This document shows, in pieces, positions 6,516 to 62,060 of a stretch of 64,000 nucleotides of DNA; position 1 is the first letter of the stretch; each line of letters starts with the position of its first letter. Source of the stretch: Leucoraja erinacea (Eukaryota); the NCBI RefSeq assembly GCF_028641065.1, contig NC_073394.1:41354001-41418000 (forward strand). Direction: 5' to 3'. Position numbers and translations under genes: made by a program. Under the pieces are notes generated by a model that saw only the letters and a list, made by a program, of their open reading frames with translations, was not told the DNA's origin and searched no databases.

Positions 6516-7850
6516 AGGGCTCGAAATTAACAGTTGCACGGGTGCCAATGGCCATTTAAAGTGCCGCCGTGCAACCTAAAAGCCCAGTCATTTTGCCCGG
6601 CTTGACACAGCAGATACTGGTTTATACCGAAGAGAGACACAAAAAACTGGTGTAACTCAGCGGGTCAGGCAGCATCTCTGGAGAAAAGCACATTTCTGGT
6701 CGGCGGAGACGACGGCTGTAGTGCGGGGTGATGGAAGGTCGGAGCAGATAACGGCCCCACACAGCAGCAGGGACGGTGACGGCGCCTCCACCTCCTGCAC
6801 CCCGCACCCCGCACCCCGCCCGCCCTGATAGCGGGTGCTGCGTACCATTCCGCCAATGGCGACAATCGCTTTCAAAACAATCCCTCCCGCACACCGAGGC
6901 CGGAAGGAGGGAGGAAGGAGGAAGGAGGAGACCCCCCGCCGTCTGAAGGACAGGAAGGTGCGGGGCCGAGCCATGCCACCACCTGCACCGCTCGGCCCCG
7001 CACCTTCCTGTTGGTTGGCGGAGGAGGGGAGGCGGTGACGAGGAGATCCCAACTGCTTCCCCCTTTGGCGGCAGCACTTGGCGGTGGACAGGGACGGCCA
7101 CGGCAGCGGGGCGATGATGCCAGTGTTGTCCGAGGACCGCTGATCTTCCTTCCTCCCCACCTCCTCTGCCCCTTCCCCCTCTCTCTCTCTCTTGTACGCC
7201 TCCCCTCCGTCCCCCTTATCCTGGGACCCCTCTTCTCCACCCCACACTGATCCCCATTCCCGCCTCTATTCAGTCCTCACTGACATCCCCTGTGCTCCCC
7301 TCCCCATCTAACCCCCCCCTCCCCCCTCCCCCCGATCTAGTCATCCTGCACTGATCATCTTTTCCACCTCGCATTGATTCTCCTGCCACTCCTCATCCAA
7401 CCTACACTGGTCCCCATATTCATCCTGTAGTGACCCCCCTCCCCCCTTCCCATCCATCCAGTACTGATCCCTCCCATCCATCCAGTAGTGATACCCTCCA
7501 TTCATCCTGTATTGAACCCCCCATTCATCCTGTAGTGCCCCCCCCTCATCCATCCTGCACTGATCCCCCCCCATCCATCCCGCACCGGTTGCCTTGTCAC
7601 CCCCACTCCCCCCCCCCCCCCCCCCCCCCGACCCTACTGCGCTGGAAATGTCTTCAGAGCGAACATTGACTATGTTTTAAAACAGAATGCAATCAAATGT
7701 GTTTTAATTCCCAATGTTATTATTTGTTTCAATCCTTAGAGATGGATTAATTAAATTGTGAACACGTGAAACATTAAAACCGCAGTGTTCGATTGTCACT
7801 GCTGCCATTGACACATTTTACATAATTCATTTTAATAGCAAATCAATGCT
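6516..7850. mobile_element. Possible hAT-like non-autonomous element (one end) with GC-rich and low-complexity interior
   Basis: Begins cagggctcgaaattaac, a hAT-type terminus. No matching right TIR was found. Internal catccatcctgtactga-like repeats at ~7350-7570. Confidence 0.35.
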
Positions 7851-11589: not shown

Positions 11590-11925
11590 ATTCGTTGGAT
11601 ATGAACATTTTTGCCAGTCCGAAGAACGTATTTTTGAATTCAGAGGTTTTGTTGGAATGTAAATTTACTGGGTTTACAGCACCGCTTGACTTGAGAAATG
11701 TAGGTGTGCTGTGGTATGGACCAGGCCAGGAACAAATCTATGCTTTTGAAACGGGAGAACATAGGCGCAAGAAACCTGGCACAGAAATATCCGACATTGA
11801 ACTATCCAAAGGAGATGCTTCACTTCTGCTTAATAATGTCCAATTGGCCGACGAAGGGAATTATACTTGCGTTGTGTTTGTCACTCCCGAAAAGGCACAA
11901 AAGAGTTCGGAACTGCGAGTTTTAG
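11590..11925 (+). CDS. NCR3LG1: Exon: IgV domain of B7-H6/NCR3LG1-like protein
   Basis: Acceptor tttag|AT and donor G|gtaaaa, phase 1-1, 336 nt. Translation (D)SLDMNIFASPKNVFLNSEVLLECKF..GVLWY..GDASLLLNNVQLADEGNYTCVVFVTPEKAQKSSELRVL has the B-strand C, C-strand W and DxGxYxC. GDASL and VTPxKAQ match human B7-H6 as I recall it (VVVTPLKAQ). The symbol means 'NCR3LG1-like'; orthology is untested. Confidence 0.88.
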
Positions 11926-12003
11926 GTAAAACACCGTCAACATTACCCGGGATGATCTGCTCTGTTATTATTGGATCTTGGTGGTTAAAATGGCTTTCAC
12001 CAA

Positions 12004-12360
12004 TTGGCCTTCATTGGCCTGCGTATTGAATATAGAAGTTTGGAGGTCATGTTGCAGTTATATAAGACGTTGGTGAGGCTGTATTTAGAGTATTGTGTTC
12101 AGTTCTGGGCACCATGCTGTAGGAAAGATGTTGTAAAACTGGAAAGGGTACAGAGAAGATTTACAAGGATGTTGCCAGGATTCGAGGGTCTAGGCTACAG
12201 GGAGAGGTTGAGCAGCCTGGGACTCTATTCTTGCAGCGCAGGAGGATGAGGTGATCTTATGGAGGTGTATAAAATGATGAGAGGAATAGATCGGGTAGAC
12301 ACACAGAGTCTCTTGCCCAGAGCAGGGGGATCGAGGACCAGAGGACATGGGTTTTAAGGT
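12004..12360 (+). mobile_element. CR1 ORF2 C-terminal fragment (intron)
   Basis: LYKTLVR.YLEYCVQFW and LERVQRRFTRM motifs. Confidence 0.85.
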
Positions 12361-13225
12361 GAATTGGCCCTCTGTAAATCACCTCTAGTGTGTCGAGAGT
12401 GGATGAGAAAGAAAGGATAACAGAACTAGTGTGAACGGGTGATTGATGATTGACGTGGACTTAATGGACGTAAGGCCGAATTCAATGCTGATTCTCAAAT
12501 AAAATTGCGAATGCAAAACTGTATAAAGAGTGACCACGTCAAAAGTATTTTAGTGTTCTCATTAATATATCCGACATATACTTAGCTGAATAATGTGGCA
12601 ATCTAAATCTGCACGTCGTCAAAGGTACTAAATTATAGGAAAGGAATGGTCAGCATGGACTCGATGGGCTGAAGGGCCTGTTTCCAAGCAGTATCAATCT
12701 ATTAATCAAAAATCAACGTTAATTGACTTTTGAGGGTAAGGGAAATCTATTTTTATTAGGGCAAGAGTTGAAGGAAGGAAAGTGGTCCATTTTGTATCAC
12801 CCCATCAATAGGTTAATATAGGACATAGGTTTAAAGTGAGCGGGGAGAGAGGAAAGATTTAATAGGAACCAGAGGAGCAACCTTTTCACAGAGGAGGTGG
12901 TGAGTGTATGGAACAAGCTGCCTAACGAGGTAGTTGAGGCAGGTACTATAACAACATTTAAAAGACATTTGTACATGGATAGGAAAGGTTTAGAGAGTTA
13001 TGGTCGAACACGGGCAGGTGGGATTAGTTTCCACGCTGCATGTCTAAAGTCTAAACTAGTATAGATGGGGCACTTTGGTCATTGTGGGCCAATTGGGCTG
13101 AAGGGTCTGCTTCTGTGCTGTATTACAGTGGCCCTTAGAATTAAGAGTCTTATAATGTGAATTAGATATTTCTGGTAATACACTGAATGGCAACTAACCC
13201 GAGGTTGCACTTGTCTTTAATACAG

Positions 13226-13546
13226 CTCAGCCGAAGCTGCATTTATCCACACAACATGTTACCATTGAGACTGGTGCGGAGAAGCTGGTGACATGTGATG
13301 CTACGGGATTTTACCCTGAGGCACATAACATCTACTGGGAAAAAGTATCCAAGGATAAGACTGAGAAACTAAGCCACGATGTCTTCAACACACTTCCAGT
13401 TCGTAATCCGGATAAAACCTTTAATGTCTCCAGTGCAATGAGAATTAAACCAACTCTAGTTGATAATGGCAATGTGTACAAGTGTGTCATGGACCATAAA
13501 TCATATACTGACCCTCTCTCACTCGAGTTGAAACTCACAGTCGAAG
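13226..13546 (+). CDS. NCR3LG1: Exon: IgC1 domain of B7-H6/NCR3LG1-like protein
   Basis: Acceptor tacag|CT and donor G|gtatgt, phase 1-1, 321 nt. AQPKL..VTCDATGFYPEAHNIYWEK..NPDKTFNVSS..YKCVMDHKS resembles B7-H6 C1 (GFYPEAINITWEK, NMDGTFNVTS, YQCVVRHAS). Confidence 0.88.
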
Positions 13547-14011
13547 GTATGTTACATCCTTTGGAAAAGTTTGGTTTAGTTATTGCCAAATCTAACGAGG
13601 TACAGTTCAAAGCTTTTTGTTCTCGAGTCCAGAAAAGATTAGTTTAGTTTATTGTGTGAAAAGTGAAAAGCTTTTGTTTGCATGTTATCGAGTCACAGAA
13701 ACATCGAAAAGTAGGTGCAGGAGTTGGCCATTCGGCCCTTCGAGCCAGCATGATCATGGCTGATCATCTAAAATCAGTACACCGTTCCTGCTTTTTCCCC
13801 ATATCCCTCGATTCCTTTAGCCCTAAGAACTAAATCTAACTCTCTTGAAAACATCCAGTGAATTGGCCAACACTGCCTTCTGTGGAAGAGATTCCCAACT
13901 CTCTGAGTGAAGAAGTTTTTCCTCATCTCAGTCCTAAATGACCTACCCCTTATTCTTAAATTGTGACCCCTGGTTCTGGACTCCCCAACATCGGGAACAT
14001 TTTTCCTGCAT

Positions 14012-15185
14012 CTAGTCAGTCCATGTGCACAGGGGAGTGCTGGTCACCCAATGCAATATTCCACCTCTCCACCAATTCCAATATTGGTGGCCAGTGGGGG
14101 AGGGGGGGGGGAAACAAAATTCAATTGCAGTTTCGTACCACTTCAAGCAGAGTGCAAGGCCACCAAATTCAATTGCAGTTTCGTACCACTTCAAGCAGAG
14201 TGCAAGGCCACCAAATTCAAGTGCAGTTTTATACCATTTCATGTAGGTTGCAAGGCCACAAAAGTTAAATGCAGTTTCATATCATTTCATGCAGGGTGAA
14301 AGGCCACCACATTCAAATGCCGTTTCATACCATTTCAAGCAGGGTGAAACCACCATAAAACCACACAAAACACCACATAAACACCACACTCACAGTTCAG
14401 TGTGTTCAGTTGATTCACAGCTCAGACAGAGTCGTGACCTCTTCCTCCCCATCTTGCTGAGATTGAGCCACACCCACACTTCCGGGTTTTATAATCCCTC
14501 CCCCTCCCACCGGAAGGGGCGTGGCCTTCATGGCATGATTGACAGGAGAGAGATTCTCAACATTATTTTAAACACCAATAACACTTTTATTTTTCATTGA
14601 TGGGAAAAATCCTCTGCACCTGATGAGCGGAGGGGGGCTGAGTAAGATGGCCAAAAATCACAGCTGTAAGTGGCAGCGTTTTATCTAAAATCAATATACA
14701 TTGAAAACAGGAAGTTGTCAATTTACCACCACCAACAACCATTTGCAGTGAAGCATTTCAAAGCAGTTACCACCACCAAAAACCATTTGCAGTGCAGCAT
14801 TTCAAAGCAACCACATTTTCATTTTCAAACCACATTAAGGGCACTCACAGTTGAGTAAACATGTGTTCAGTGTTATTCACAGCTCGAGAGACATGGCCCT
14901 CTCGCTTCCTCCATCTTGCAGAGACTGAGTGAGGCACAACGCTTCCGGGTTTTATAGTCCCACCAGCAGGGCCAGCAGGGAGAATGTCAACATTTTTTAA
15001 ACATTAATAACTCTTTTATTTTTCATCGATGGGAAAAATCCTCTTGTCCTGCGCAGTGGAGGGGGACTTTGAGTAAGATGGCCAAAAATCACAGCTGTAA
15101 GTGGCAGCGTTTTCTCATAAATCATGAAACAGAAAAACATGACGTGGTCAAGATCTATGTCACTTTTAGTGATATAGATAAGATA
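14012..15185 (-). mobile_element. Non-autonomous Helitron-like element with a 48-bp minisatellite and a duplicated internal module
   Basis: The minus-strand 5' end is TCTATATCACTAAAA. A 48-bp unit (caccaaattcaattgcagtttcgtaccacttcaagcagagtgcaaggc) repeats ~5 times at 14113-14350. Module ~14385-14720 recurs at ~14840-15180. Related sequence lies at 52578-52832 and 59620-59700. Confidence 0.55.
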
Positions 15186-17955
15186 AGATCCCCTCTCATC
15201 TTTCTAAATTCCAGTGAATAGTAGTCCAGAAAAGATTAGTTTGGTTTAGATTATTGTCACGTGTACAAAAGTGCAGTGAAAAGCTTGAGTTGTATGCTAA
15301 CCAGTCAGCGGAAAAACTATACCTGATAACAATTGATTCATTCACAGTGTTCAGATCCATGACAAAGGAAATAACATTTAGTGCAAGATAAAATCCCGTA
15401 AAGTCCGATTAAAGATAGTCCAAGGGTTTCCAGTGCGGTTGCCAGTTGCTCAGGACTGTTGTCCAATTGTTGAGAGGATGATTCAGTTGCCTGATAACAG
15501 ACTATACATGAATACAACCAAGCTGTCCAGAGTGCTTGGATAAAGGGCACAACATTTAGTACAAACTTTGAAGTCCAATTAAGTCCAACTAAAGATCGTT
15601 TAGAGGTCTCCAATGAGGTAGATGGGAGGTCAGGACCACAATCTCGCTGATAAAACGGCCATTCAGTTGCCTGATGCCTGTATCTCTTGCTCGATGGGAG
15701 AGGGGAGAAGAGGGAGTGACCAGGGTGAGACCCTTGATTATGCTGGTGGCCTTGCCGAGGCAGCGTGAAGTGCAGACGGAGTCAGTGGAAGGGAGGTTGG
15801 CTTGCGCGATGGTCTGGGCTGCGTACACAACTCTGCAATTTCCCGTTGTCTTGGATGGAGCTGTTCCCGAACCATGTTATGATGTCTCCCAATAAGATGC
15901 TTTCTATGTCACAACTGTAGAAGCTTGTGAGGGCTGTTTGGGACATACTGATCATCTGAGCCTTATAAGGAAGTATTGGTGTGCTTTCTTGGCCTTTGCT
16001 TCAATGTGGCTGGTGCAGGACAAATTTATTTTGTTATTTATTCATAGGAACTTGGAGATATTTTACAGGGTACTTTATTAAAATGTTTCCAATAATATAT
16101 ATGAAGATATTTGTGTGTGCTTAATACATATCCTTCACTGAGATGTGCAGTGCTTTAACTGGGGTTTATCCTTTGACCAAGATAAGAACGGGAGGATTTA
16201 AGATGAGAGGGGAGAGTTATTGGAAATTTGAGAATAACTCTTTCAGAAAGAGATGGTAGGTATATGGAAGGAGCTGCCAGGGGAGGTAGTTGAGACAACA
16301 TTTAAAAGACATTTGGAGAGGTTAGAAGGATATGGGGTAAATAAGGACAGGTGTCGAGAGTCAAGTCAAGACAAGAGAGTTTATTGTCATGTGTCCCAGA
16401 TAGGACAATGAAATTCTTCCAAGTGTTTAATAGACATTTGTACCGAAAACGGAACAATTAAATTCTTACTTCGATGGTCTACTGTAGATGGGGCATCTTG
16501 GTCAGCATGGAGAAGTTGGGCTGAAGGGCCTATTTCCATGCTGTATCACTCTCTTCCATCACAAGTAGATACTGTCTCAGCCATTGAGAATGATCATAAT
16601 CCTGGCACATTTGTGGTTTGGTGGGGAAGTTTGGTGCTGGTCTTTCATTGACTGCCTAGTAATTCATACAGATGTTTGTGGCCCTGGCCGTGCAAGCTTT
16701 TGGGAGATCCTGATAGAAATATCTAACATGATTAGAGGCATTGATAGGTGTCGAAGTCAGAACCGTTATCCCAGAGTGGAAATGTCAAAGACTGGAGGAC
16801 ATAGCTTCAAGGTGAACAGGGCAAAGATTAAAGAAGAGGCAGAGTGGCATTAATTAGGCTTAAATCAGCACATATATGTACAGGGAATGGAGGGATACGG
16901 ATTATAAACGGGCAGATTAATTTAATTTGGCATCATGTTCAGCATGGACATTGTGGGCCGAAGGGCCTGTTCCTGTGCTGTACTATTCTAAATTTGTTCT
17001 TTCGATATGCAGTTAAAGTATAATTTTTTTCAGTTGCCTAGTTGCCATGAGTAATATTTTGCTCATTTTTTCCTTTCTATGTACATTAGCTTAATCTCTT
17101 AATCTCTCCTTTCCAATATGCAGCAGCAGGATTTACTTTATTGCCTGTTCAGATCTGCACTGACGAGCGACCACCCCCCCCCTCCCACCGCACTATCCTA
17201 CACATTAATGACAATTTACAATTTTACAAAAGCCAATTAATTTACAAATCTGCACGTCTTGGATTGTGGGATGAAACCGGAGCACCGAGAGAAACCAACA
17301 CAGGTCACAGGGAGAACGTACAAACTCTGTATACACAGCACGATTGATCCCGGGCTTTTGGCGCTGGCGGTGTGACTAGCCCTGTAAACCCTTGAGTTAT
17401 TTCTGATTGCAGCAGGTCATGGAATCACTAATTGGAATTCCTAGGCCTTTAATTAAAGGGGATATAAATTGCACAATTATGGTTTCAATGTTTTTAATAA
17501 CTGTCCCCCCCATCCCCCGCCCCTTCCACCAAAATTCCTCCCTCCATGTTACATTTCACTCCTCCCCTTCTCTCCTTATCTGACACATTTTGTCTCCTTA
17601 TCACCTCTAGCCTTTTGTCCACCCATCCTCAAATCAGTAAAAATCCCTCCTCACCTACCACTTTGTCCAACCCCCATTTTCTTATCATCTTTCCCCCACT
17701 ACAATCAGACTGAATGAAGGTCCAGACCCGAAACATCACCTATCCATGTTCTCCAGAGAAGCTGCTGAGTTACTCCAGCACTCTGTGTTCTACACAACAT
17801 TTTGGCATCTGCAGTTCCTCGTGTCGCCTCTTTAAAATCCTGTCCACTATTGTTATTTACTATTGGCAAAAATGAAGGCGTCTGCAAATAAAGAAGGTTA
17901 TTTCACGTGGCATGGTGTTTGTGGATATGCTGATTCTTAGTGTTTTACATTCCAG

Positions 17956-18069
17956 AACCTGTGGAATATTCGTCAACAGGGGCTATTCTTGGAGTTTTAT
18001 TTGCTGGAATTATTCTATGCGCACTAATTGCCTTTGGACTCTATGTTTACTTCGTGAAATACAGACCAG
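17956..18069 (+). CDS. Exon: transmembrane segment of the B7-H6-like protein
   Basis: Acceptor tccag|AA and donor G|gtaata, phase 1-1, 114 nt. EPVEYSSTGAILGVLFAGIILCALIAFGLYVYFVKYRP is a ~26-aa hydrophobic stretch followed by basic residues (type I orientation). Confidence 0.82.
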
Positions 18070-18855
18070 GTAATATGACAAATGGAGAATGTTCATCAAT
18101 GCGTTGTAATTGTCTGCCTCGAGTTATAGCAGCTACAGCACAGAAACAGGCCATTCAGCCCACCACATCCACGCCGACCATCGAGTACTCGTATACATAA
18201 ATATCAGTTCATTCAGCCCACTTTCCCATGAGCTCGTACCTGATCCTACCATATTCCTCACACACAAGCAGAAATTTACAGGGCACAATTAATCAAACTT
18301 TTTGGGGTGCAGGAGGAAACCAAAACACCCAACATGGGGAACATGCAAACTCCACATAGACAACATCGGAGGTTAGCATTGAACCCCGCCTGTGTGCTGT
18401 GTAAAGTACTGGAGTTGTGTGGCTTTTGTAATTATTTGAATGCTTCTTGTTACATTTTCCCAATATGGAGGGCTGGTGATCTTTTAGTTTCAACTACAGA
18501 TCACCCTGTGATGATTGTATACCCATATAGACGGCAGCCAGGCTTGGAGCTTCTCTTTGAATGGCCCACTGGGCATAACTTGTTTCAGTTATAATTTCAG
18601 AGATACAGTGTGGAAACAGGCCCTTCCACACTGACCACTGATCGCCCCATATACTAGTTCTATCCTTCTCACTTGGGTCAATGTACAGAAGCTGATTAAC
18701 CCATAAACCTATACGTCTGTGGAATCTGGGAGAAAACCCACCCGGTCACAGTGAGAACGTATAAACTTCGTACCGACAGCACCCGACGTCAGGATTGTTC
18801 CTCAGAAAGAACATTTAGATTGCCAAGTTTTAATTACCTGCTTTGTTTTGACTAG

Positions 18856-19293
18856 TTACTCCAGGGATCACTGGACCCAATGGACATCAAACCATGAAAC
18901 ATCTTGAAGAAAAAAAGACCACTTGGAGGGTTAGTCCATTCCGTCCTCGTGAAATTATAATTTACTTATACCTAAAGAGGAAGGGGGATCAGGTGAGAAA
19001 AACTATTTTAGATTGGGACAGCAGAAAATCTACTGAAAACAGAAATGGAAAGATCAACGGAGAGGGTCACAATGAAGCGAGGATTCTCATAAATTCAAAT
19101 TATGTCAATGCATCTTTTACACCATTGGATCCCAAATATGACACTGATGCAGATGGGATTTCCAGTGTGATGATCAATGTGGAAATATATCCAGATGTTA
19201 ACCAGGATGCAGGGGCTGAATTAACCATTGAAGTTCAACATAAATCACTGAAACAGCCGATATCAAAGACTTTGATACTGGATGTTAAAGGAG
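18856..19293 (+). CDS. Exon: cysteine-less C1-like Ig domain downstream of the TM exon
   Basis: Pyrimidine-rich tract with actag|TT acceptor (an in-frame alternative AG at 18863-18864) and donor G|gtaaag, phase 1-1, 438 nt open. The C1 pattern is recognisable: TWRVSPFRPREI (for CxxxGFxPxxI), PDVNQDAGAELTIEVQHKSL (for YxCxVxHxSL), and ISKTLILDV as the G strand. Confidence 0.78.
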
Positions 19294-19359
19294 GTAAAGT
19301 ATAAATGTTTTCTTTAATCATTAATGTCTATATATTGTGATTTCATTCTGAATGTCTTC

Positions 19360-19910
19360 AGAGTCATAGAGTATACAGCGTAGAAACAGGCCCTTCAGCC
19401 CAACTTGCCCAAGCCGTCCAACATGTCAGTCAGTCTGGACACTTTGTCCCATCTGCCTGCGTTGGGTCCATATCCCTCTAAACCTGTTCTATCCATGTAC
19501 CTGCCTAAATATTTCTTAAAAATTGTGATAGTACCTACCTCAACTATCTCGTCTGGCAGCTTGTTCCATACACTCACCATCTTTGTATGAAAAGGTTACC
19601 CCTCAGATTCCGATAAAATCTTTCCACCCTCCTCATCTTAAATCTATGTCCTCTGGTCCTCGATTCACCTACTCGGGGCAAAAGACTGTGCATCTACCCG
19701 ATCTATTCCTCTGATGATCTTCTACACCTCTATTTGATCACTCTCATCGTCCTGCGCTCCAAGGAATAGAGTCCTAGCCTGCTCAACCTCTCCCTATAGC
19801 TCAGGCCCTCGGGTCCTGGCAACATCCTCGTAAATCTTCTCTGCACCCTTTCCAGCTTGACAACATCTTTCTTGTAACAAGTTGTCCAAAACTGAACACA
19901 ATACTCAGTA
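19360..19910 (-). mobile_element. CR1 3' fragment
   Basis: VSVWNKLP..EVGTITIFKKYL motif and a CR1 3' UTR. Confidence 0.8.
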
Positions 19911-20160
19911 TTTCAATCAATACTCATTGAAATAAATGCGTGATTATGCGTTCATAGTAACATCTATAATTTGTAACATTGATGTGTTTTATGCAATGAG
20001 AGCATGGAACAGCATAACACAGGAACGGCCCCTTTGGCCCACAATGTCCATGTTGAACATGATGCCAAGATAAACTAATCTCTGCTGCTTGCACGCAATC
20101 CATGTCCCTCCATCCCTGCATATTTATGTGCCTATCTAAAAGCTTCTTAAACACCACCAT

Positions 20161-23100
20161 ATAATAATGGGGGGAGATTTCAATTGTGTTATAGTCCCAT
20201 ACTTAGATAAATCAATAAAGCTAGGGAAGCGTCTTGTTAAAACTAAGACCTGTGAATTTTTAAATAATTATATAAAAAATAATAACATAACTGATGTTTG
20301 GAGAATAGCAAATCCAAGTGGTAGGGAATACTCATTTTATTCATCAGTTCACAAAACTTATTCGCGAATTGACTATTTCTTATTGGACACAAAATTGATC
20401 CCGTATACGAATAAACCATCATATCATAATAGTATTATTTCTGATCACTCACCATTGACTTTTATACTTAAAATTGAGGGAATGCCGAGTATAAAACCTT
20501 TTTGGAGGTTCAATGCACACATATTAAATAACCCGTAGGGTTACGAGTATATAAAAAAACAAACAAAACGTTTTTTCGAAATAAATGACACGCCGGGTAT
20601 TTCTGCACCGCTATTATGGGAAACCTTCAAGGCATATATTCGCGGTGTCATAATCTCTTACCAAAGTTTTCAAAATAAGGAAAATAAAAGAGAACTTCAG
20701 CGGATAGAACAGAAAATAAAATTACTAGAACTGGACAATGCAACTGACCCAACCATAAATAAACATAATAAGATAACTTTATTGAAATATAAAGTCAATA
20801 GAATACTATCGGCTAGAATAATAAGATTATTCCAAATTACAAAACAAGCACACTTCGAATTTGGGGATAAGCCACATAAACTACTTGCGAGGCAACTGAA
20901 GCAACGAGAAAAGGAAAAAACTATTACTAAAATTAAATCGGATAAGGGTGAGTTTCTAACATTGCCTAAGGATATTAATAAGAGGTTTGCCCAATTTTAT
21001 CATCATTTATATACAAATTTTTAAAATAATTTTTTAGATAATTGCAAGCTCCCAAAATTGGATAGTTTAGAACAAGAGCAATTAGGAGCACGGATTACTA
21101 GTGAAGAAATAAAACAAATAATAAACTCACTGAAAAATGGGAAGACCCCAGGACCAGACGGTTTTAGTAATGAATTTTATAAAAGATTTCAGGAGTCAAT
21201 TGTACCAAGATTATTCAATTTATACATGCAGGCTTATACTGAAAATAAACTACCAGAAACCCTAGCAGAAGCAACAATAACGCTTATACCAAAAAAAGAT
21301 AAAGATTTGGATGAACCGGGTTCTTATAGAGCTATTTCACTTCTAAATACGGATCAGAAAATTTTAGCAAAGATTCTAGCTAGAAGGCTAAATAATTATA
21401 TTAACAATTTAATAAATATGGATCAAACGGGATTCATACCCAAAAGACAATCATTTAATAATTTGAGGAGGCTTTTCAATATAATGTACTCTCACAATGA
21501 GGACAATGAAGATATTTCAGTTGTCACGCTGGATGCAGAGAAGGCATTTGATCAAGTAGAATGGCAGTATTTATGCAAGGGACTCCAAAAATTTAATACG
21601 GGAGAGAATTTTATTAGATGGATTAAACTACTTTACGATAGACCTACGGCAAGAATATTAACTAACAATACGCTATCTCCAAAATTTTACTTATCAAGGG
21701 GTAATAGCCAAGGGTGTGCCTTATCACCATTGCTATTTGCCCTTATGATAGAACCGCTGGCCGAATGGATTAGAAATCACCCGAATATTCACGGATATAA
21801 CACCAAGGACTCAAAGAATAAAATTTCATCATATGCCGATGATATCCTTTTATATATTACTAATACACAAACGAGTATACCCACCTTATTAACACTAATT
21901 GAGGAATTCGGCTCTTTTTCAGGATATAGAATAAATTGGAATAAAAGCGAAATTATGTCTTTAAAACCACAGAATTCGAGACACTTACTAAAATTCCCCT
22001 TCAAAATTGCAACAGAAAAATTCCAGTAGCTGGGTATTCAAATTACGAGAAGACACAAATCATTATTTAGTGCCAATTTTATACCACTATTAAATAAACT
22101 GAATGATACGATTAAATTTTGGAAAACGCTTCCGCTCTCATTGATAGGTAGAATTAACGCTATAAAAATGACTTTCTTACCACAATTAATATATTTGTTT
22201 CAAGCGATCCCAATATATATTCCAAAATATTTTTTCAAAAAACTAGATTCCACCATCACTAATTTTATATGGGACTACAGAACACATAGAATTCAACGAA
22301 AGCATTTGTGCAAATCTAAAGAAGTTGGGGGTTTATCATTACCTAACTTTATGTATTACTACTGGGCAGTGCATATTAAGACCATAATGTACTTGCTGGA
22401 TAGTTCCACTCAGCAGTTGGAGTGGATAAGAATGGAGAAAGAGGAGTGCTATCCGCACGATATAGGAACGATCCTGCTCTCACCGATAAAATTGAATAGT
22501 ATAATATATAAGAAGAACCCAATTATTCACAATATAATAAGAATTTGGAAACAAATAAAAGTATCCTTGAAATTAAATAATTTATCAGTACTAACCCCAC
22601 TATTGAACAACCCCGCATTTAAACCTTCTCTCATCGACAACACATATCAACAATGGGATAGACTGGGGATTAGGAAAGTAGGGGATATGTATGAAGTGGG
22701 CAAACTGTTATCATTTCAACAATTAAAATTTAAATTTAAATTGAAGGATAATCAATATTTTAAATATATACAGGTATGTGACTTTATGAAGAAATATACA
22801 CATAGATTTCAAACTATATTTTTAGACCCTTTAGAAGAAGCAATGAATATTAAGGCTGATTCACAAAAATTAATATCATACTTTTATAATAATATATTAA
22901 ATAGAGAATCACCCTCAACAGAAGCACTAAGGGAAGATTGGGAACATGAGCTAATGATAAAGATCTCGAAGGATAGATGGGAAAAGTATTTGATGAATAC
23001 ACATAACTGTTCTATTAATGCAAGACATAATTTAATTCAATTCAAATTATTACATAGACTATATTATTCAAAAACGAGGTTGAATCAATTTTATCCAAAC

Positions 23101-23881
23101 GTCTCTCCCAGATGCGATAAATGTTTGTTTCAAAACGCTAATATAACACATTCATTTGTAGGATGTACAAAGTTGAATACATTTTGGAGTGATATATTTG
23201 ATATATTTACAAAGCTTTTCAAGTCAAGAATAGAACCCAAAATGGAATGGATTATATTTGGAATAATAGGAGAAGATACCAATTTAAATAAAGATCAAAT
23301 GGTTTTTTTTTATTATGGGTTAATAATTGGAAAGAAATTGACACTTAAATTTTGGAAAAATACAACCATACCAACTGTTAAAATGTGGATTAGGAATATG
23401 ATGGACATAGCATGCCTTGAAGAAATGAGACTCCGACTAATAGATAAATATGACCAATTCTTAAGGAGTTGGTCTCCTTTCATCGACTTTTTGGAATCAT
23501 GTGATGCAGCGGTACCATAAAGATTGCTGATTTCAGTTCATGACGCGGATAGATCTACATCTCCGAATACAGATTTGAAAAAATCTCTTTTAAGGGGCCT
23601 TCTCTTCTATTTTTACTTTCCACTTTCTCTCTTTCTTTTTTATTTTTCCATACACACTTCACGTTTTTCTACTCTCCACCATCTATTTTTCCACTTTTTC
23701 ATCTTTCTATTGTTTTCTTTTTCTTGTCTTGCTTACTTCCTTCTCATAACATAAAACTAGAGGTTGTACATAGAATGGATTACGGTATTACATAGTTGGC
23801 ACCTAAAATTAGGTTCCACTGTACTGTTTTGTACTGTATTAACTTCTAATAAAATAAACAAAAAAACCCCCCAAAAAAACC
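20161..23881 (+). mobile_element. 5'-truncated L1-clade LINE (ORF2: C-terminal half of EN, RT, Cys-rich C-terminus)
   Basis: GGDFN, YSRIDY, ISDH, KTPGPDGF, LDAEKAFD, QGCALSPLLF, YADD and RCDKC motifs. In-frame stops at ~20536 and ~22027 and a frameshift near 21020. A-rich tail at 23848-23880 and a 9-bp TSD caccaccat (20152-20160 / 23882-23890). Confidence 0.95.
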
Positions 23882-24398
23882 CACCACCATTGTATCTGCC
23901 TCCACCACCACCCCTGGCAGCGTGTTCCACGTTGTGTTTAACAATGAACTTTGCCCCTCACCTCTCCTTTAAACTTTGCCACTCTAATCTTAAAGCTATG
24001 CCCTCCAGTCTTTGACATTTTTACCTTGGGAAAAATATTCTGACTGCCTACCTTTTATCATGTATGTCTCGATGGGCCAAAGGGCCTGTTTCCACGTTGT
24101 ACCTCTAAACTAAACTAAATCAGGACCGCTTTCTGGTTGGTAATAGGATGGTTCAGTTGCCTGATGACAACTAATACATTAGTTATAGTAATACATTTAC
24201 AATGGGGCGACTAGAACTGCACGCAATACTCCAACTGCGGCCTAACCAAAGTCTGCAGACCTGCATCATGGCCTGAATGCTTTTAGGAGATTCTCTCATC
24301 AGTCAACTCAAAGTCACGGAAAATTCTCACAGTAATGTAATATTTTCTTGTTTTTGTGTATTTCTACTAGTTGATTTGTTTGTTTTCTTTTCTCAAAG

Positions 24399-24776
24399 TG
24401 CCACCCAAGGTTTCAAACATCTTCAAACCCTCCTGCATCATTCACAATAAATCTGCATCTTTGATCTGTTCAATCACTGGGTTTAAACCGAGACCTTTAC
24501 GTATCACGTGGCAACGAAAGAGAAAGAACATGGAGGCAGAAGAAATAGTTCGAATGGAGGCGGACAACAGGACAACTATTCACGGTGGTGACGGGGAGAT
24601 GTCCACATATAAACATTACATCAGTGAGATGAAGCATGATGATGAATCCTACAGCATCACTAGTGTACTAGAGTTAGTGCCTGATATACAGCAAGATCAA
24701 GACTCGCTTTACACCTGTAAAGTACATCACAGCGGCACCAGTGACCAGGAGAGAGAAATCAAGTTAATAATTGCAG
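24399..24776 (+). CDS. Exon: second post-TM IgC1 domain (both cysteines present)
   Basis: Long pyrimidine tract with caaag|TG acceptor and donor G|gtatat, phase 1-1, 378 nt. VPPKVSNI..LICSITGFKPRPLRITWQ..SYSITSVLELVPDIQQDQDSLYTCKVHHS is a canonical C1-set motif series. Confidence 0.85.
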
Positions 24777-43489: not shown

Positions 43490-45140
43490 GGGAGATGCCA
43501 GAGAGTAATGGTGGATGGTTGTTTGTCAGGTTAGAGGCCAGTGACTAGTGGGGTGCCACAGGGATCTGTGTTGGGTCCACTGTTGTTTGTCATGTACATC
43601 AATGATCTGGATGATGGTGTGGTAAATTGGATTAGTAAGTTTGCAGATGGTACTAAGATAGGTGGGGTTGTGGATAATGAAGTAGATTTTCAAAGTCTAC
43701 AGAGAGATTTATGCCAGTTGGAAGAGTGGGCTGAAAGATGACAGATGGAGTTTAATGCTGGTAAGTGTGAGGTGCTACATCTTGGCAGGACAAATCAAAA
43801 TAGGACGTACATGGTAAATGGTAGGGAAATGAAGAATGCAGGTGAACAGAGGGATCTGGGAATAACTGTGTGCAGTTCCCTGAAAGTGGAATCTCATGTA
43901 GATTGGGTGGTAAAGAAAGCTTTTGGTGTGCTGGCCTATATAAATCAGAGCATTGAGTATAGAAGTTGGGATGTAATGTTAAAATTGTACAAGGCATTGG
44001 TGAGGCCAACTCTGGAGTATGGTGTACAATTTTGGTCGCCTAATTGTAGGAAGGATGTCAACAAAATAGAGAGAGTACAGAGGAGATTTACTAGAATGTT
44101 GCCTGGGTTTCAACAACTAAGTTACAGAGAAAGGTTGAACAAGTTAGGGCTTTATTCTTTGGAGCGCAGAAGGTTAAGGGGGGACTTGATAGAGGTCTTT
44201 AAAATGATGAGAGGGATAGACAGAGTTGACATGGATAAGCTTTTCCCACTGAGAGTAGGGAAGATTCAAACAAGGGGACAAGACTTGAGAATTAAGGGAC
44301 TGAAGTTTAGGGGTAACATGAGGGGGAACTTCATTACTCAGAGAGTGGTGGCTGTGTGGAATGAGCTTCCAGTGAAGGTTACACAGAAAAGCTGGAGAAA
44401 CTCAGCGGGTGCAGCAGCATCTATGGAGCGAAGGAAATAGGCAACGTTTCGGGCCGAAACCCTTCTTCAGACTGATCGGGGGTGGGGGTGGGTCGGGACA
44501 AGAAAGGGAAAAGGAGGAGTAGCCAGAAGGCTGGAGGGTGGGAGGAGATAGTAGGGGAGCTGAGGAAGGGGAGGAGACAGCAAGGACTAACAGAATTGGG
44601 AGAATTCGATGTTCATGCCCCGGGGGTGTAGACTCCCCAAACGGAATATGAGGTGCTGTTCCTCCAATTTCCGGTGCTGCTCGCTGTGGCCATGGAGGAG
44701 ACCCAGGACAGAGAGGTCGGAGGCGGAGTGGGAGGGGGGGTTGAAGTGCTGAGCCACCGGGAGGTCAGCTTGGTTATTGCGGACCGAGCGGAGGTGTTCG
44801 GCGAAACGATCGCCCAACCTCCGCTTGGTCTCACCGATATAGATCTGCTGGCATCTAGAGCAGCGGACGCAATAGATGAGGTTGGAAGAGATGCAGGTAA
44901 ACCTCTGTCGCACCTGGAACGACTGCTTGGGTCCTTGAACGGAGTCGAGGGGGGAGGCAAAGGTGGTGGAGGCAGGTTCGTTTTTATCATTTAAAAATAA
45001 ATGGGATAGTTATATGGACGGGAAAGGAATGGAGGGTTATGGTCTGAGCGCAGGTATATGGGACGAGGGGAGAATACATGTTCGGCACGGACTAGAAGGG
45101 TCGAGATGGCCTGTTTCCGTACTGTAATTGTTATATGGTT
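43490..45140 (+). mobile_element. CR1 3' half inserted in L1-B, itself split by a Penelope fragment
   Basis: SGVPQGSVLGP, KFADGTK and LGLYSLERRR motifs; tail gttatatggtt; imperfect TSD attaaagaaatt / attaaaaaaatt. Confidence 0.88.
44378..44959 (-). mobile_element. Penelope-like element 3' fragment (GIY-YIG endonuclease and terminal repeat)
   Basis: NLIYCVRCSRC..IYIGETKRRLGDRFAEH..LHPRGMN. The CR1 sequence resumes exactly on the other side. Confidence 0.92.
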
Positions 45141-60897: not shown

Positions 60898-61319
60898 ACC
60901 CCAAACTGCAGCCTCAGTATTAAACTGCAGATGCTGTAATCCTGAGCAATGCACAAAGTGCACCTGAAACTCAGAAGGTCAGACAGCGTCTGTGGAGGGA
61001 ATGGACAGAAGACGTTTCGGGTCGAGAATGTCACTTGTCCATTCCTGACCCGCTGAATTCCTCCAGCACTTTGATTTGTGTACAATATTCTACAGAATGT
61101 AACTTATTCTAAGTTACTAATTTATTCTACTGATCAGATTGGTTCATTTCCTCTGGAATTAGCACAAGGTTTCGGGTCGAAACCTTTCTTCAGACTAATT
61201 GTAGTCGTGGGGTGAAAGCTTGAAAAGAAAGTTGGGGTGGGACAAAGCTTGGCAAGTGATAGGTGGATACAAGTGTGGGAGTGGAGTGAGTGGCAGATGG
61301 GTGGAGTGGGCGATAAAGG

Positions 61320-62060
61320 CCCAAGCCACCCCCTCCCCAGCTACTTACCCCGGCAACCGCAGTAGATGCAACACCTGGCCCTATACCTCCCCCCTTGACT
61401 CTGTCCAAGGACCCCAACAGTATTTTCAGGTGAGGCAGAGGTTCATTTGCATCTCCTCCAACCTTATCTACTGTATCTGCTGTTCCAGGTGTGGACTCGT
61501 GTATATCGGCGAGACCAACCGCAGGCTCAGCGATCGTTTCATTGAACACCTCCACTCAGTCCGCTTAGACCTACGCAATCTCCTGGTTGATAAACACTAT
61601 AACTCTCCCTCCCATTCTCACATTGACCTTTCTGTCCTGGGCCTCCTCCATTGTCAGAGTGAGGACCAACGCAAATTGGAGGAACAGCGCGTCATATTTT
61701 GCTTGGGCAGCTTACACTCCAGTGGTATGAATATTGATTTATTTACATAACCCTTGCTTTCCCTCTCGCCCCGTCTCTCCCCCACCCTGGTTCTTTGATT
61801 AGTTTCACTGTCCTGATTAATTTTACTGATTGTATGTCTCGTTGTCACCTTCCCCTCAGCGAACAATGAACAATGAACCATTCTACATTTCCTTATCATC
61901 TGTCATTTTCTCACCGTACCCTTCCACATCTCTCCCCTGACTCATTCTGAAACATCTCCTATTTCTTCTCTCCAGAGATGCTGCCTTTCCCGCTGAGTTA
62001 CTCCAGCATTTTTTTTGTGTCTATCTTCAGTGTATACCAACATCTGCAGTTCCTTCCTAC
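61320..62060 (+). mobile_element. Diverged Penelope 3' fragment (GIY-YIG)
   Basis: NLIYCICCSRCGLVYIGETNRRLSDRFIEH..LHSSGMNI, followed by terminal-repeat-like sequence. Confidence 0.85.

What the first reader, a model, noticed from the sequence alone, without database searches (positions are those of the whole stretch)
11590..24776. B7-H6-like receptor with two Ig domains after its transmembrane segment (V-C1-TM-C1*-C1): predicted intracellular Ig domains
Seen in sequence: five same-strand exons with canonical AG/GT sites, all phase 1-1, splice into one open frame of 529 codons. The order is IgV, IgC1, a TM helix ending in KYRP, then two more C1-like Ig domains; I found no second hydrophobic segment. 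Established: B7-family proteins are normally V-C-TM with a non-Ig tail, C1-set domains are typically extracellular or lumenal, and human B7-H6 (the NKp30 ligand) has a Gag-related cytoplasmic region. Inference: with type I topology the two extra Ig domains are cytosolic. That would be an unusual immune receptor or ligand whose tail was built by exon shuffling of C1 modules, perhaps as an intracellular docking platform. I cannot tell whether this architecture has already been reported.
Basis: partly seen in the sequence, partly recalled or inferred. Interest (0 to 1): 0.9.

Follow-up and report, generated by a model that had tools for sequence, protein, structure and literature searches.

The report
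B7-H6-like gene with post-membrane Ig domains
A skate gene related to the human natural-killer-cell ligand B7-H6 really does splice its membrane-anchor exon onto further antibody-type (Ig) domains, an arrangement kept from chimaeras to alligators, so these domains should lie inside the cell unless the anchor exon is skipped.

Summary
The five exons, their AG/GT sites, the phase 1-1 junctions and the 529 codons are as described.

- **RNA support:** contigs from two independent studies join the TM exon to the next exon (18069>18856). Three studies and raw reads join exon 2 to the TM exon.
- **Domains:** exons 1-2 are closest to human B7-H6. Exon 4 ("X") is a degenerate C1 domain with no Cys and no Pfam hit, but profile comparison and AlphaFold2 show a C1-like Ig fold. 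Exon 5 is a canonical C1 domain.
- **Extent:** the window holds only the 5' part. Skate relatives continue with more C1-like domains, an acidic linker and a last Ig-like domain, with no second TM.
- **Distribution:** V-C1-TM-X-(C1)n occurs in chimaera, sharks, rays, bichirs, coelacanth, lungfish, amphibians and alligators. NCBI names some members NCR3LG1. This is an ancient long-form B7-H6, not a local exon shuffle.
- **Topology:** positive-inside flanks, and a frog variant with three TMs, place X and the later domains in the cytosol of the TM-containing product.
- **Caveat:** the TM exon is skipped in RefSeq isoforms of four species, which gives an all-secreted form. Two post-TM domains keep Cys-Trp-Cys in 11-12 of 12 taxa.

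I found no paper describing this.

The parts
11590..11925 (+). Exon E1: IgV domain of the B7-H6-like ectodomain (phase 1-1, 336 nt)
   Evidence: AG/GT sites were read. Pfam gives V-set at 5.8e-10. The best solved relatives are human B7-H6 chains, E 6.5e-12. It is 83-85% identical to Amblyraja LOC116984368 and 98% to the first V domain of Leucoraja LOC129705966.
13226..13546 (+). Exon E2: IgC1 domain of the ectodomain (phase 1-1, 321 nt)
   Evidence: Sites were read. Pfam gives C1-set at 2.2e-11. The best solved relative is human B7-H6 at E 5e-15, and the next is UrIg2 at 1.6e-9. RNA joint 13546>17956 appears in X1, X2, X4 and X22.
17956..18069 (+). Exon E3: transmembrane anchor exon (38 codons, phase 1-1). 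It is a symmetrical cassette that is skipped in isoforms of other species.
   Evidence: Sites were read. The maximum 19-residue Kyte-Doolittle hydropathy is 2.8. The flank before it is acidic and K-Y-R-P follows it. RNA joints exist on both sides. TM-less RefSeq isoforms exist in Hemitrygon, Bombina and Rana and in Heterodontus.
18856..19293 (+). Exon E4: domain 'X', a C1-derived Ig domain. It lacks the canonical Cys pair and Trp, and has a roughly 27-residue disordered insert between strands C' and D.
   Evidence: No Pfam family matches. BLASTP against E5 gives E 4e-7. hhalign gives 96.6-99.9% probability against the C1 domains of the same family. AlphaFold2 gives mean pLDDT 88.3 and pTM 0.80, a beta sandwich with low confidence at residues 60-86. 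All top Foldseek matches are Ig folds. Acceptor 18856 is fixed by RNA joint 18069>18856.
24399..24776 (+). Exon E5: canonical C1-set Ig domain ('D4' of the family). It ends on an open phase-1 donor.
   Evidence: Sites were read. Pfam gives C1-set at 3.2e-13. The best solved matches are IgM constant domains. It is 92% identical to Amblyraja and 97% to Leucoraja relatives. Cys-Trp-Cys is kept in all aligned taxa. Reading through the donor would hit a stop after two codons.

Best explanation
The window carries the 5' part of a skate member of an old, undescribed 'long form' of the B7-H6 (NCR3LG1) lineage. Its order is signal peptide, IgV, IgC1, one membrane anchor, a degenerate C1 domain (X) pressed against the anchor, then a chain of C1-type domains.

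**Shown**
- The anchor exon is included in mature RNA and is spliced in frame to the Ig exons.
- The same order is conserved across jawed vertebrates.
- No later hydrophobic segment exists in full-length relatives.

**Inferred**
- The anchor works as an ordinary stop-transfer signal. The TM-containing product therefore shows V-C1 outside the cell, as an NKp30-type ligand, and carries X and the following Ig domains in the cytosol.
- Because the anchor exon is a symmetrical cassette, skipping it (seen in four other species) makes a second product. In that product the whole chain is luminal and secreted.

**Conjecture**
- The cytosolic Ig chain serves as a scaffold or signalling tail. Mammals would have replaced it by the Gag-derived tail of B7-H6.
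For: - **Exon structure and frame:**
- **RNA joints:** E2>E3 in three studies plus raw reads. E3>E4 in two studies. One 1720-nt contig crosses both joints.
- **Family and relatives:** 61 relatives of exon 4 were found in 1.84 billion representatives. The closest are Amblyraja LOC116984368 and Leucoraja LOC129705966, at 82-98% identity per exon.
- **Architecture in relatives:** Pfam shows a V domain and up to 7 C1-set stretches. 89 of 111 family proteins have exactly one hydrophobic segment just before X. Essentially none has one after it.
- **Taxa:** chimaera, sharks, rays, Polypterus and Erpetoichthys, Latimeria, Protopterus, frogs, salamanders and Alligator. Several carry the NCBI name NCR3LG1.
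- **B7-H6 likeness:** both ectodomain exons hit human B7-H6 first.
- **Topology:** mean net charge is -0.6 in the 12 residues before the anchor and +2.2 after it, in 27 members. A ranid-frog-like subfamily (its 69%-identical one-TM relative is from Rana temporaria) has three hydrophobic helices with loops charged +, -, +. It arose from a one-TM relative by a roughly 70-residue insertion, so X stays on the far side.
- **Domain X:** it has lost the canonical disulfide (no Cys in the skate).
- **Glycosylation sites:** sequon density after the anchor is about 0.58 per 100 residues, which by my rough estimate is chance level. The ectodomain has about 1.1.
- **Short-form genes:** in some, X is the whole post-anchor part.
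Against: - Post-anchor domains D4 (= exon 5) and D5 keep the Cys-Trp-Cys triad: D5 in 12 of 12 taxa, D4 in 11 of 11 aligned (second Cys 10 of 10), chimaera to alligator. This is what disulfide-bonded, ER-folded C1 domains look like.
- TM-less isoforms exist in four species, and a Scyliorhinus model also lacks the TM. The Ig chain may therefore be selected as a secreted protein.
- No C1-set domain is known to me to work in the cytosol.
- No protein-level or topology data exist.
- In this window, the partner of the E5 donor and the leader exon were not found.
- The TM-plus to TM-minus ratio in the skate could not be measured. Only the best-supported joints were printed, so E2>E4 cannot be excluded.
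Confidence: 0.6

Rival explanations
1. The Ig chain works outside the cell. The functional carrier of X and the C1 domains is the TM-skipped, fully secreted isoform, a soluble V-C1-X-(C1)n protein. The TM-containing mRNA mainly supplies a membrane-bound V-C1 ligand. Its cytosolic Ig tail is then a passenger: unfolded, degraded or functionless.
For: - TM-less RefSeq isoforms occur in Hemitrygon, Bombina and Rana and in Heterodontus. The Scyliorhinus model GCB65803 joins C1 directly to X.
- D4 and D5 keep Cys-Trp-Cys in 11-12 of 12 taxa.
- Skipping a TM exon is a common way to make soluble receptors (my own knowledge).
Against: - The anchor exon, with positive-inside flanks, is conserved at the same place in nearly all members.
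- Skate RNA contigs from three studies show the TM-containing form, and no printed joint skips it.
- X and several later domains have lost one or both canonical Cys.
- Short-form and three-TM genes carry X as their only post-anchor domain.
- Sequons after the anchor are at about chance level.
Confidence: 0.25
2. Two neighbouring genes are read together. A short B7-H6-like gene (V-C1-TM) and a separate downstream secreted multi-C1 gene are joined by read-through splicing, and the fused models are artefacts.
For: - All exons are phase 1-1, so any join stays in frame.
- If the E3 donor were not used, a 44-codon tail and a stop follow in the intron.
- The Leucoraja isoform X5 model mixes a V-C1 pair 98% identical to this window with a TM and X only 82-86% identical. 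Cross-copy splicing or hybrid models therefore exist at this locus.
Against: - No leader exon lies between E3 and E4.
- X starts 2-12 residues (usually under 7) after the anchor's basic residues in 27 members.
- The same order holds in more than ten distant lineages.
- The elephant-shark UniProt entry V9K7L7, which I believe derives from a cDNA, has the same order.
- No family member was seen with a signal peptide directly before X.
Confidence: 0.05
3. The topology is not type I. Either the hydrophobic exon does not stop translocation, or unseen downstream exons of this copy add another membrane span. In both cases the Ig domains end up outside the cell.
For: The exons after E5 are not in the window, so this copy's 3' end is unseen.
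Against: - The segment is 25-30 residues long, strongly hydrophobic and followed by K/R.
- Full-length relatives have no later hydrophobic segment above threshold, apart from weak Ig-core strands.
Confidence: 0.05

Closest known systems
Human B7-H6 (NCR3LG1), the ligand of NKp30
   Same: It has an IgV plus a C1-type IgC ectodomain followed by a single anchor. Both skate ectodomain exons hit human B7-H6 chains first among all solved structures. NCBI names alligator and frog members of the family NCR3LG1.
   Different: By my own knowledge, the human tail is a non-Ig, Gag-related sequence. Here the tail is a chain of Ig domains (X plus C1-set), and the anchor exon is a cassette. NKp30 binding was not tested.
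UrIg / UrIg2 of elasmobranchs (PMC12227049)
   Same: These are non-rearranging genes with a V domain followed by many C1-type domains. UrIg2 appears among the solved relatives of E2 and E5.
   Different: UrIg2 has a VJ domain and nine C1 domains, with the TM and cytoplasmic part at the very end. Here the anchor sits after the second domain and the remaining domains follow it.
Soluble splice forms made by skipping a TM exon (for example soluble CTLA-4, CD86 delta-TM, Fas delta-TM; my own knowledge)
   Same: A symmetrical TM exon is either included or skipped. This gives a membrane form and a secreted form from one gene.
   Different: In those genes the tail is short and unstructured. Here several hundred residues of Ig domains change compartment with the splice choice.
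Integrin beta-4 cytoplasmic fibronectin-III repeats; titin, obscurin and palladin Ig domains (my own knowledge; one search lists only muscle proteins for 'intracellular Ig domains')
   Same: These are beta-sandwich modules of an 'extracellular' type working in the cytosol, in one case as the tail of a membrane protein.
   Different: Those are FN3 or I-set modules without a conserved disulfide. Here the modules are antigen-receptor or MHC-type C1-set domains, and two of them keep the disulfide cysteines.

Membership tests
B7-H6 / NCR3LG1 (B7 family) | N-terminal IgV followed by a C1-type IgC domain | tested here: met
   Pfam gives V-set at 5.8e-10 for E1 and C1-set at 2.2e-11 for E2.
B7-H6 / NCR3LG1 (B7 family) | Closest characterised relative is B7-H6 rather than another B7, butyrophilin or MHC chain | tested here: met
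   Human B7-H6 chains rank first for E1 (6.5e-12; CD276 comes next at 1.8e-11). They also rank first for E2 (5e-15; the next is UrIg2 at 1.6e-9). The margin for E1 is small.
B7-H6 / NCR3LG1 (B7 family) | Single-pass type I anchor directly after the C domain | tested here: met
   Hydropathy of E3 and positive-inside flanks. The leader exon was not found in the window, but relatives have signal peptides.
B7-H6 / NCR3LG1 (B7 family) | Orthology by gene neighbourhood | not tested
The NCBI names NCR3LG1 and NR3L1 on alligator, frog and bichir members are automatic.
B7-H6 / NCR3LG1 (B7 family) | Binds NKp30 | not testable with these tools
   This needs protein binding assays.
B7-H6 / NCR3LG1 (B7 family) | Gag-related non-Ig cytoplasmic tail (human form) | tested here: not met
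   The post-anchor exons are Ig domains. E5 is C1-set by Pfam, and E4 is Ig-like by profile and by fold.
C1-set Ig domain (for exon 4, 'X') | Matches the Pfam C1-set model | tested here: not met
   No Pfam family at E up to 1.
C1-set Ig domain (for exon 4, 'X') | Homology to bona fide C1 domains | tested here: met
   BLASTP against E5 gives E 4e-7. hhalign gives 98.6% to the ectodomain C1, 99.9% to D4 and 97.7% to D5. The D4 value may be inflated by misplaced rows in alignment A1.
C1-set Ig domain (for exon 4, 'X') | Ig beta-sandwich fold | tested here: met
   AlphaFold2 gives pLDDT 88.3 and pTM 0.80. Foldseek returns at least 500 Ig-fold matches at E 0.001 or better.
C1-set Ig domain (for exon 4, 'X') | Canonical Cys (strand B), Trp (strand C), Cys (strand F) | tested here: not met
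   The skate exon has no Cys. Across the family the F-strand Cys is absent and the B-strand Cys is present in only some taxa.
UrIg-type non-rearranging antigen-receptor-like genes | All Ig domains precede a C-terminal TM and cytoplasmic part | tested here: not met
   The anchor lies after the second domain, and there is no C-terminal hydrophobic segment in relatives.

The most novel reading that the evidence does not exclude
Antigen-receptor/MHC-type C1-set Ig domains have been used for more than 400 million years as the cytoplasmic tail of the ancestral B7-H6 ligand. X sits as a disulfide-free, membrane-proximal adaptor domain. One cassette exon decides whether the same Ig chain is built inside the cell as a tail or outside it as a secreted protein. 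Mammals later swapped this tail for a Gag-derived one.
Probability: 0.4. Interest if true: 0.85.

Novelty: new variant of a known kind. Interest (0 to 1): 0.75.

Why it matters
B7-H6 and NKp30 form one of the oldest known ligand-receptor pairs of natural-killer-type recognition. The origin of the odd human tail is unexplained. If the ancestral tail was a chain of C1 domains, three things follow:

- C1-set domains, the hallmark of antibodies, T-cell receptors and MHC, would have a cytosolic use that nobody has looked for.
- A single cassette exon would move several hundred residues of folded domains between two compartments. That is an unusual way to make two proteins from one gene.
- The history of the B7 family and the proto-MHC would gain a new, easily testable character.

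The gene models are already public but are labelled 'uncharacterized', so the question can be tested directly with cDNA and simple topology assays.

Tried and rejected
Each exon was searched by reference.
I chose 13300-19299 to cover E2-E3-E4.
No relative's locus, synteny or nucleotide-level selection test was possible.

**Searches that found nothing**
- Leader exon upstream of 11590: tblastn with the Amblyraja leader and a scan for ATG, hydrophobic stretch and phase-1 donor both gave nothing convincing.
- Further Ig exons or a second anchor exon in 24777-64000: none by motif scan, hydropathy or tblastn with three relatives.
- Solved structures by sequence for E4: only chance hits.
- Literature: seven full-text searches found no description of Ig domains after the B7-H6 anchor, and none of the relatives' locus names (one search failed on a too-short term). 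The two most relevant papers (Flajnik et al. 2012, PMC3709836; Ohta and Flajnik 2015, PMC4594805) are not held. Prior mention there cannot be excluded.

**Readings rejected**
- 'MHC-like or tapasin-like second gene starting at E4': rejected by the RNA joint and by conservation.
- 'UrIg member': rejected by the position of the anchor.

**Method notes**
- Sequon and regex counts of Cys-Trp-Cys domains are crude. The alignment-based count is the one I rely on.
- In one search I dropped the first duplicated V-C1 pair of the Amblyraja protein inside the script so that all rows had the same architecture.
Full report
**1. The observation**

I read the five proposed exons base by base.
- E1 is 11590-11925, E2 13226-13546, E3 17956-18069, E4 18856-19293 and E5 24399-24776.
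- Each is preceded by AG and followed by GT. Each starts with two bases of a split codon and ends with one, so all are phase 1-1.
- The lengths are 336, 321, 114, 438 and 378 nt, which make 529 codons.

Pfam calls E1 V-set, E2 C1-set and E5 C1-set. E3 and E4 match nothing.

E3 holds the only strongly hydrophobic stretch of the five exons. The residues just before it are acidic and K-Y-R-P follows it.

Every search used single exons by reference.

**2. RNA evidence**

One search found runs that hold about a third of the sampled words of 17941-19293. That is the share expected if only exons are present. I laid three such contig sets, from three studies, plus one raw-read oligo-dT run on 13300-19299.
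- Joint 13546>17956 (GT..AG) is seen in X1, X2 and X4, and in one raw read of X22.
- Joint 18069>18856 (GT..AG) is seen in X1 and X4, with 114 letters on the shorter side in both.
- One 1720-nt X1 contig runs E2-E3-E4 with 2-3 mismatches per exon and continues 413 nt beyond 19293.
- An X4 contig holds the last 180 nt of E4 plus exactly 378 nt, the length of E5.

Joint 19293>24399 was outside the 6,000 letters I could lay. Only the best-supported joints were printed, so a minor E2>E4 form in the skate cannot be excluded.

**3. What exon 4 is**

- BLASTP of E4 against E5 gives 24% identity over 105 residues, E 4e-7. The F-x-P-x-x-I and x-x-x-V-x-H motifs are in register.
- A profile of E4 relatives matches the family's own C1 domains at 96.6-99.9% probability.
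- AlphaFold2 with a 31-row alignment gives mean pLDDT 88.3 and pTM 0.80. The model is a beta sandwich with the short helix before strand F that is typical of C1, and a low-confidence insert at residues 60-86.
- All leading Foldseek matches are Ig folds.
- The skate exon has no cysteine.

X is a C1 paralogue that has lost the canonical disulfide and the Trp.

**4. The gene is longer and old**

HMMER of E4 against 1.84 billion representatives found 61 relatives.
- The closest relatives found are Amblyraja radiata LOC116984368, at 82-92% identity per exon by tblastn, and Leucoraja erinacea LOC129705966.
- Those proteins continue after the E5 domain with more C1-like domains, an acidic linker and a last Ig-like domain. 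They total about 1250 residues.
- None of those later exons lies in 24777-64000. E5 ends on an open donor, and reading through it stops after two codons. The window therefore holds only the 5' part, or this copy splices to exons beyond the window.

Names and taxa looked up for 30 clusters:
- chimaera, horn shark, basking shark, sawshark, catshark, sawfish, electric ray, stingray and skates;
- Polypterus and Erpetoichthys (one entry is called 'NR3L1');
- coelacanth and lungfish;
- many frogs and salamanders (Bombina and Rhinophrynus are named NCR3LG1);
- Alligator (named NCR3LG1).

Of 111 family proteins, 89 have exactly one hydrophobic segment just before X. Essentially none has one after it. 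Both ectodomain exons hit human B7-H6 first among all solved structures. The family is best described as the long, non-mammalian form of B7-H6.

**5. Where the Ig chain sits**

*For the cytosol*
- The anchor has a mean net charge of -0.6 in the 12 residues before it and +2.2 after it, in 27 members.
- X begins 2-12 residues (usually under 7) after those basic residues.
- A ranid-frog-like subfamily (its 69%-identical one-TM relative is from Rana temporaria) differs from that relative by a roughly 70-residue insertion. The insertion adds two more hydrophobic helices, with loops charged +, -, +. The number of spans stays odd, so X stays opposite V-C1.
- In these and other short-form genes, X is the whole post-anchor part.
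- X, D6, D8 and the last domain have lost one or both canonical cysteines.
- Sequons after the anchor are at about chance density, 0.58 per 100 residues by my rough estimate, against about 1.1 in the ectodomain.

*For the secretory pathway*
- D4 (= E5) and D5 keep the Cys-Trp-Cys triad: D5 in 12 of 12 taxa, D4 in 11 of 11 aligned (second Cys 10 of 10), chimaera to alligator.
- The anchor exon is a cassette. RefSeq isoform pairs of Bombina, Rana and Hemitrygon differ by exactly this exon of 34-38 residues.
- A Heterodontus isoform that is 31 residues shorter also lacks the TM.
- A Scyliorhinus model joins C1 straight to X.
- Without the anchor the whole chain is luminal and would be secreted.

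**6. Best reading**

One gene makes two products.
- The TM-containing mRNA, the form seen in the skate RNA contigs, makes a type I membrane protein. It has a B7-H6-like V-C1 outside and a tail of Ig domains inside.
- The TM-skipped mRNA makes a secreted V-C1-X-(C1)n chain.

I put about 0.6 on the TM-containing protein really carrying a cytosolic Ig tail that matters. I put about 0.25 on the Ig chain mattering only in the secreted form. Read-through artefact and a non-type-I topology get about 0.05 each. What the tail would do (scaffold, signalling, anchoring) is conjecture.

**7. Comparison with known systems**

- Human B7-H6 shares the ectodomain and the anchor but has a non-Ig tail.
- UrIg2 shares the 'V plus many C1' design but has its anchor at the end.
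- Soluble forms made by TM-exon skipping are common, but not with hundreds of residues of folded domains behind the anchor.
- Cytosolic beta-sandwich tails exist (integrin beta-4), but not of the C1 set. These last two points rest on my own knowledge.

Seven full-text searches found no description of this architecture. The two most relevant B7H6 papers are not held, so prior mention cannot be excluded. The gene models themselves are public and mostly labelled 'uncharacterized'.

**8. This scan**

An earlier first-reader note (s1-876290) reports a B7-H6-like gene with six C1 domains after its anchor, 21.15 Mb upstream in the same genome. I did not test it. If it holds, the skate has at least two such loci on this piece.

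**9. Loose ends**

- The first V-C1 pair of the Leucoraja isoform X5 model is 98% identical to this window's E1 and E2. Its anchor and X are only 82-86% identical. The window copy is either a tandem paralogue whose V-C1 exons can also be spliced to a downstream copy, or the model is a hybrid.
- The leader exon was not found.

Noticed in passing
window 20167-23520 (+): Intron 4 holds a long-interspersed-element insertion. Its open frames of 123, 80, 323 and 459 residues look like endonuclease and reverse transcriptase. This explains the low G+C (0.32-0.33) of 20-24 kb.
   Followed up: no
window 14117-14346: A 48-bp tandem repeat of 4.8 copies, 86% matches, lies in intron 2. It produces the repetitive open frames listed there.
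   Followed up: no
window 13700-14099, 16300-16499, 17700-17899: Intronic stretches reach very high summed contig depth in the RNA-like runs (up to about 6,800), with many 'goes back' and inverted joints. They behave as abundant transcribed repeats, not as parts of this gene.
   Followed up: no
P0110 (Leucoraja erinacea LOC129705966 isoform X5) against window E1-E5: The model has two V-C1 pairs. The first is 98% identical to the window's E1 and E2. Its anchor is 82%, its X 86% and its D4 97% identical to E3-E5. This suggests tandem paralogues with cross-copy splicing, or a hybrid gene model.
   Followed up: partly
P0030, P0033, P0040, P0010 (frog-like family members): This subfamily has three hydrophobic helices between C1 and X. 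It arose by a roughly 70-residue insertion relative to a 69%-identical one-TM gene of Rana temporaria (P0017). X is the only post-anchor domain in P0030, P0033 and P0040; P0010 has two.
   Followed up: partly
window 44587-44913 (-) and 61205-61747 (+): These open frames carry a GIY-YIG-like motif of the kind seen in Penelope-type retroelements. I judged this by eye from the translations.
   Followed up: no
window 6600-7250: A G+C-rich stretch (0.53, strong negative GC skew) has long overlapping open frames on both strands, rich in Gly, Arg and Pro. It may be a CpG-island-like or low-complexity region. It matched no leader exon of this gene.
   Followed up: no
same genome, 21,150,774 letters before the window's start: Earlier first-reader note s1-876290 reports a B7-H6-like receptor with six tandem C1 domains after its TM segment. 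It is probably a paralogue of this gene.
   Followed up: no
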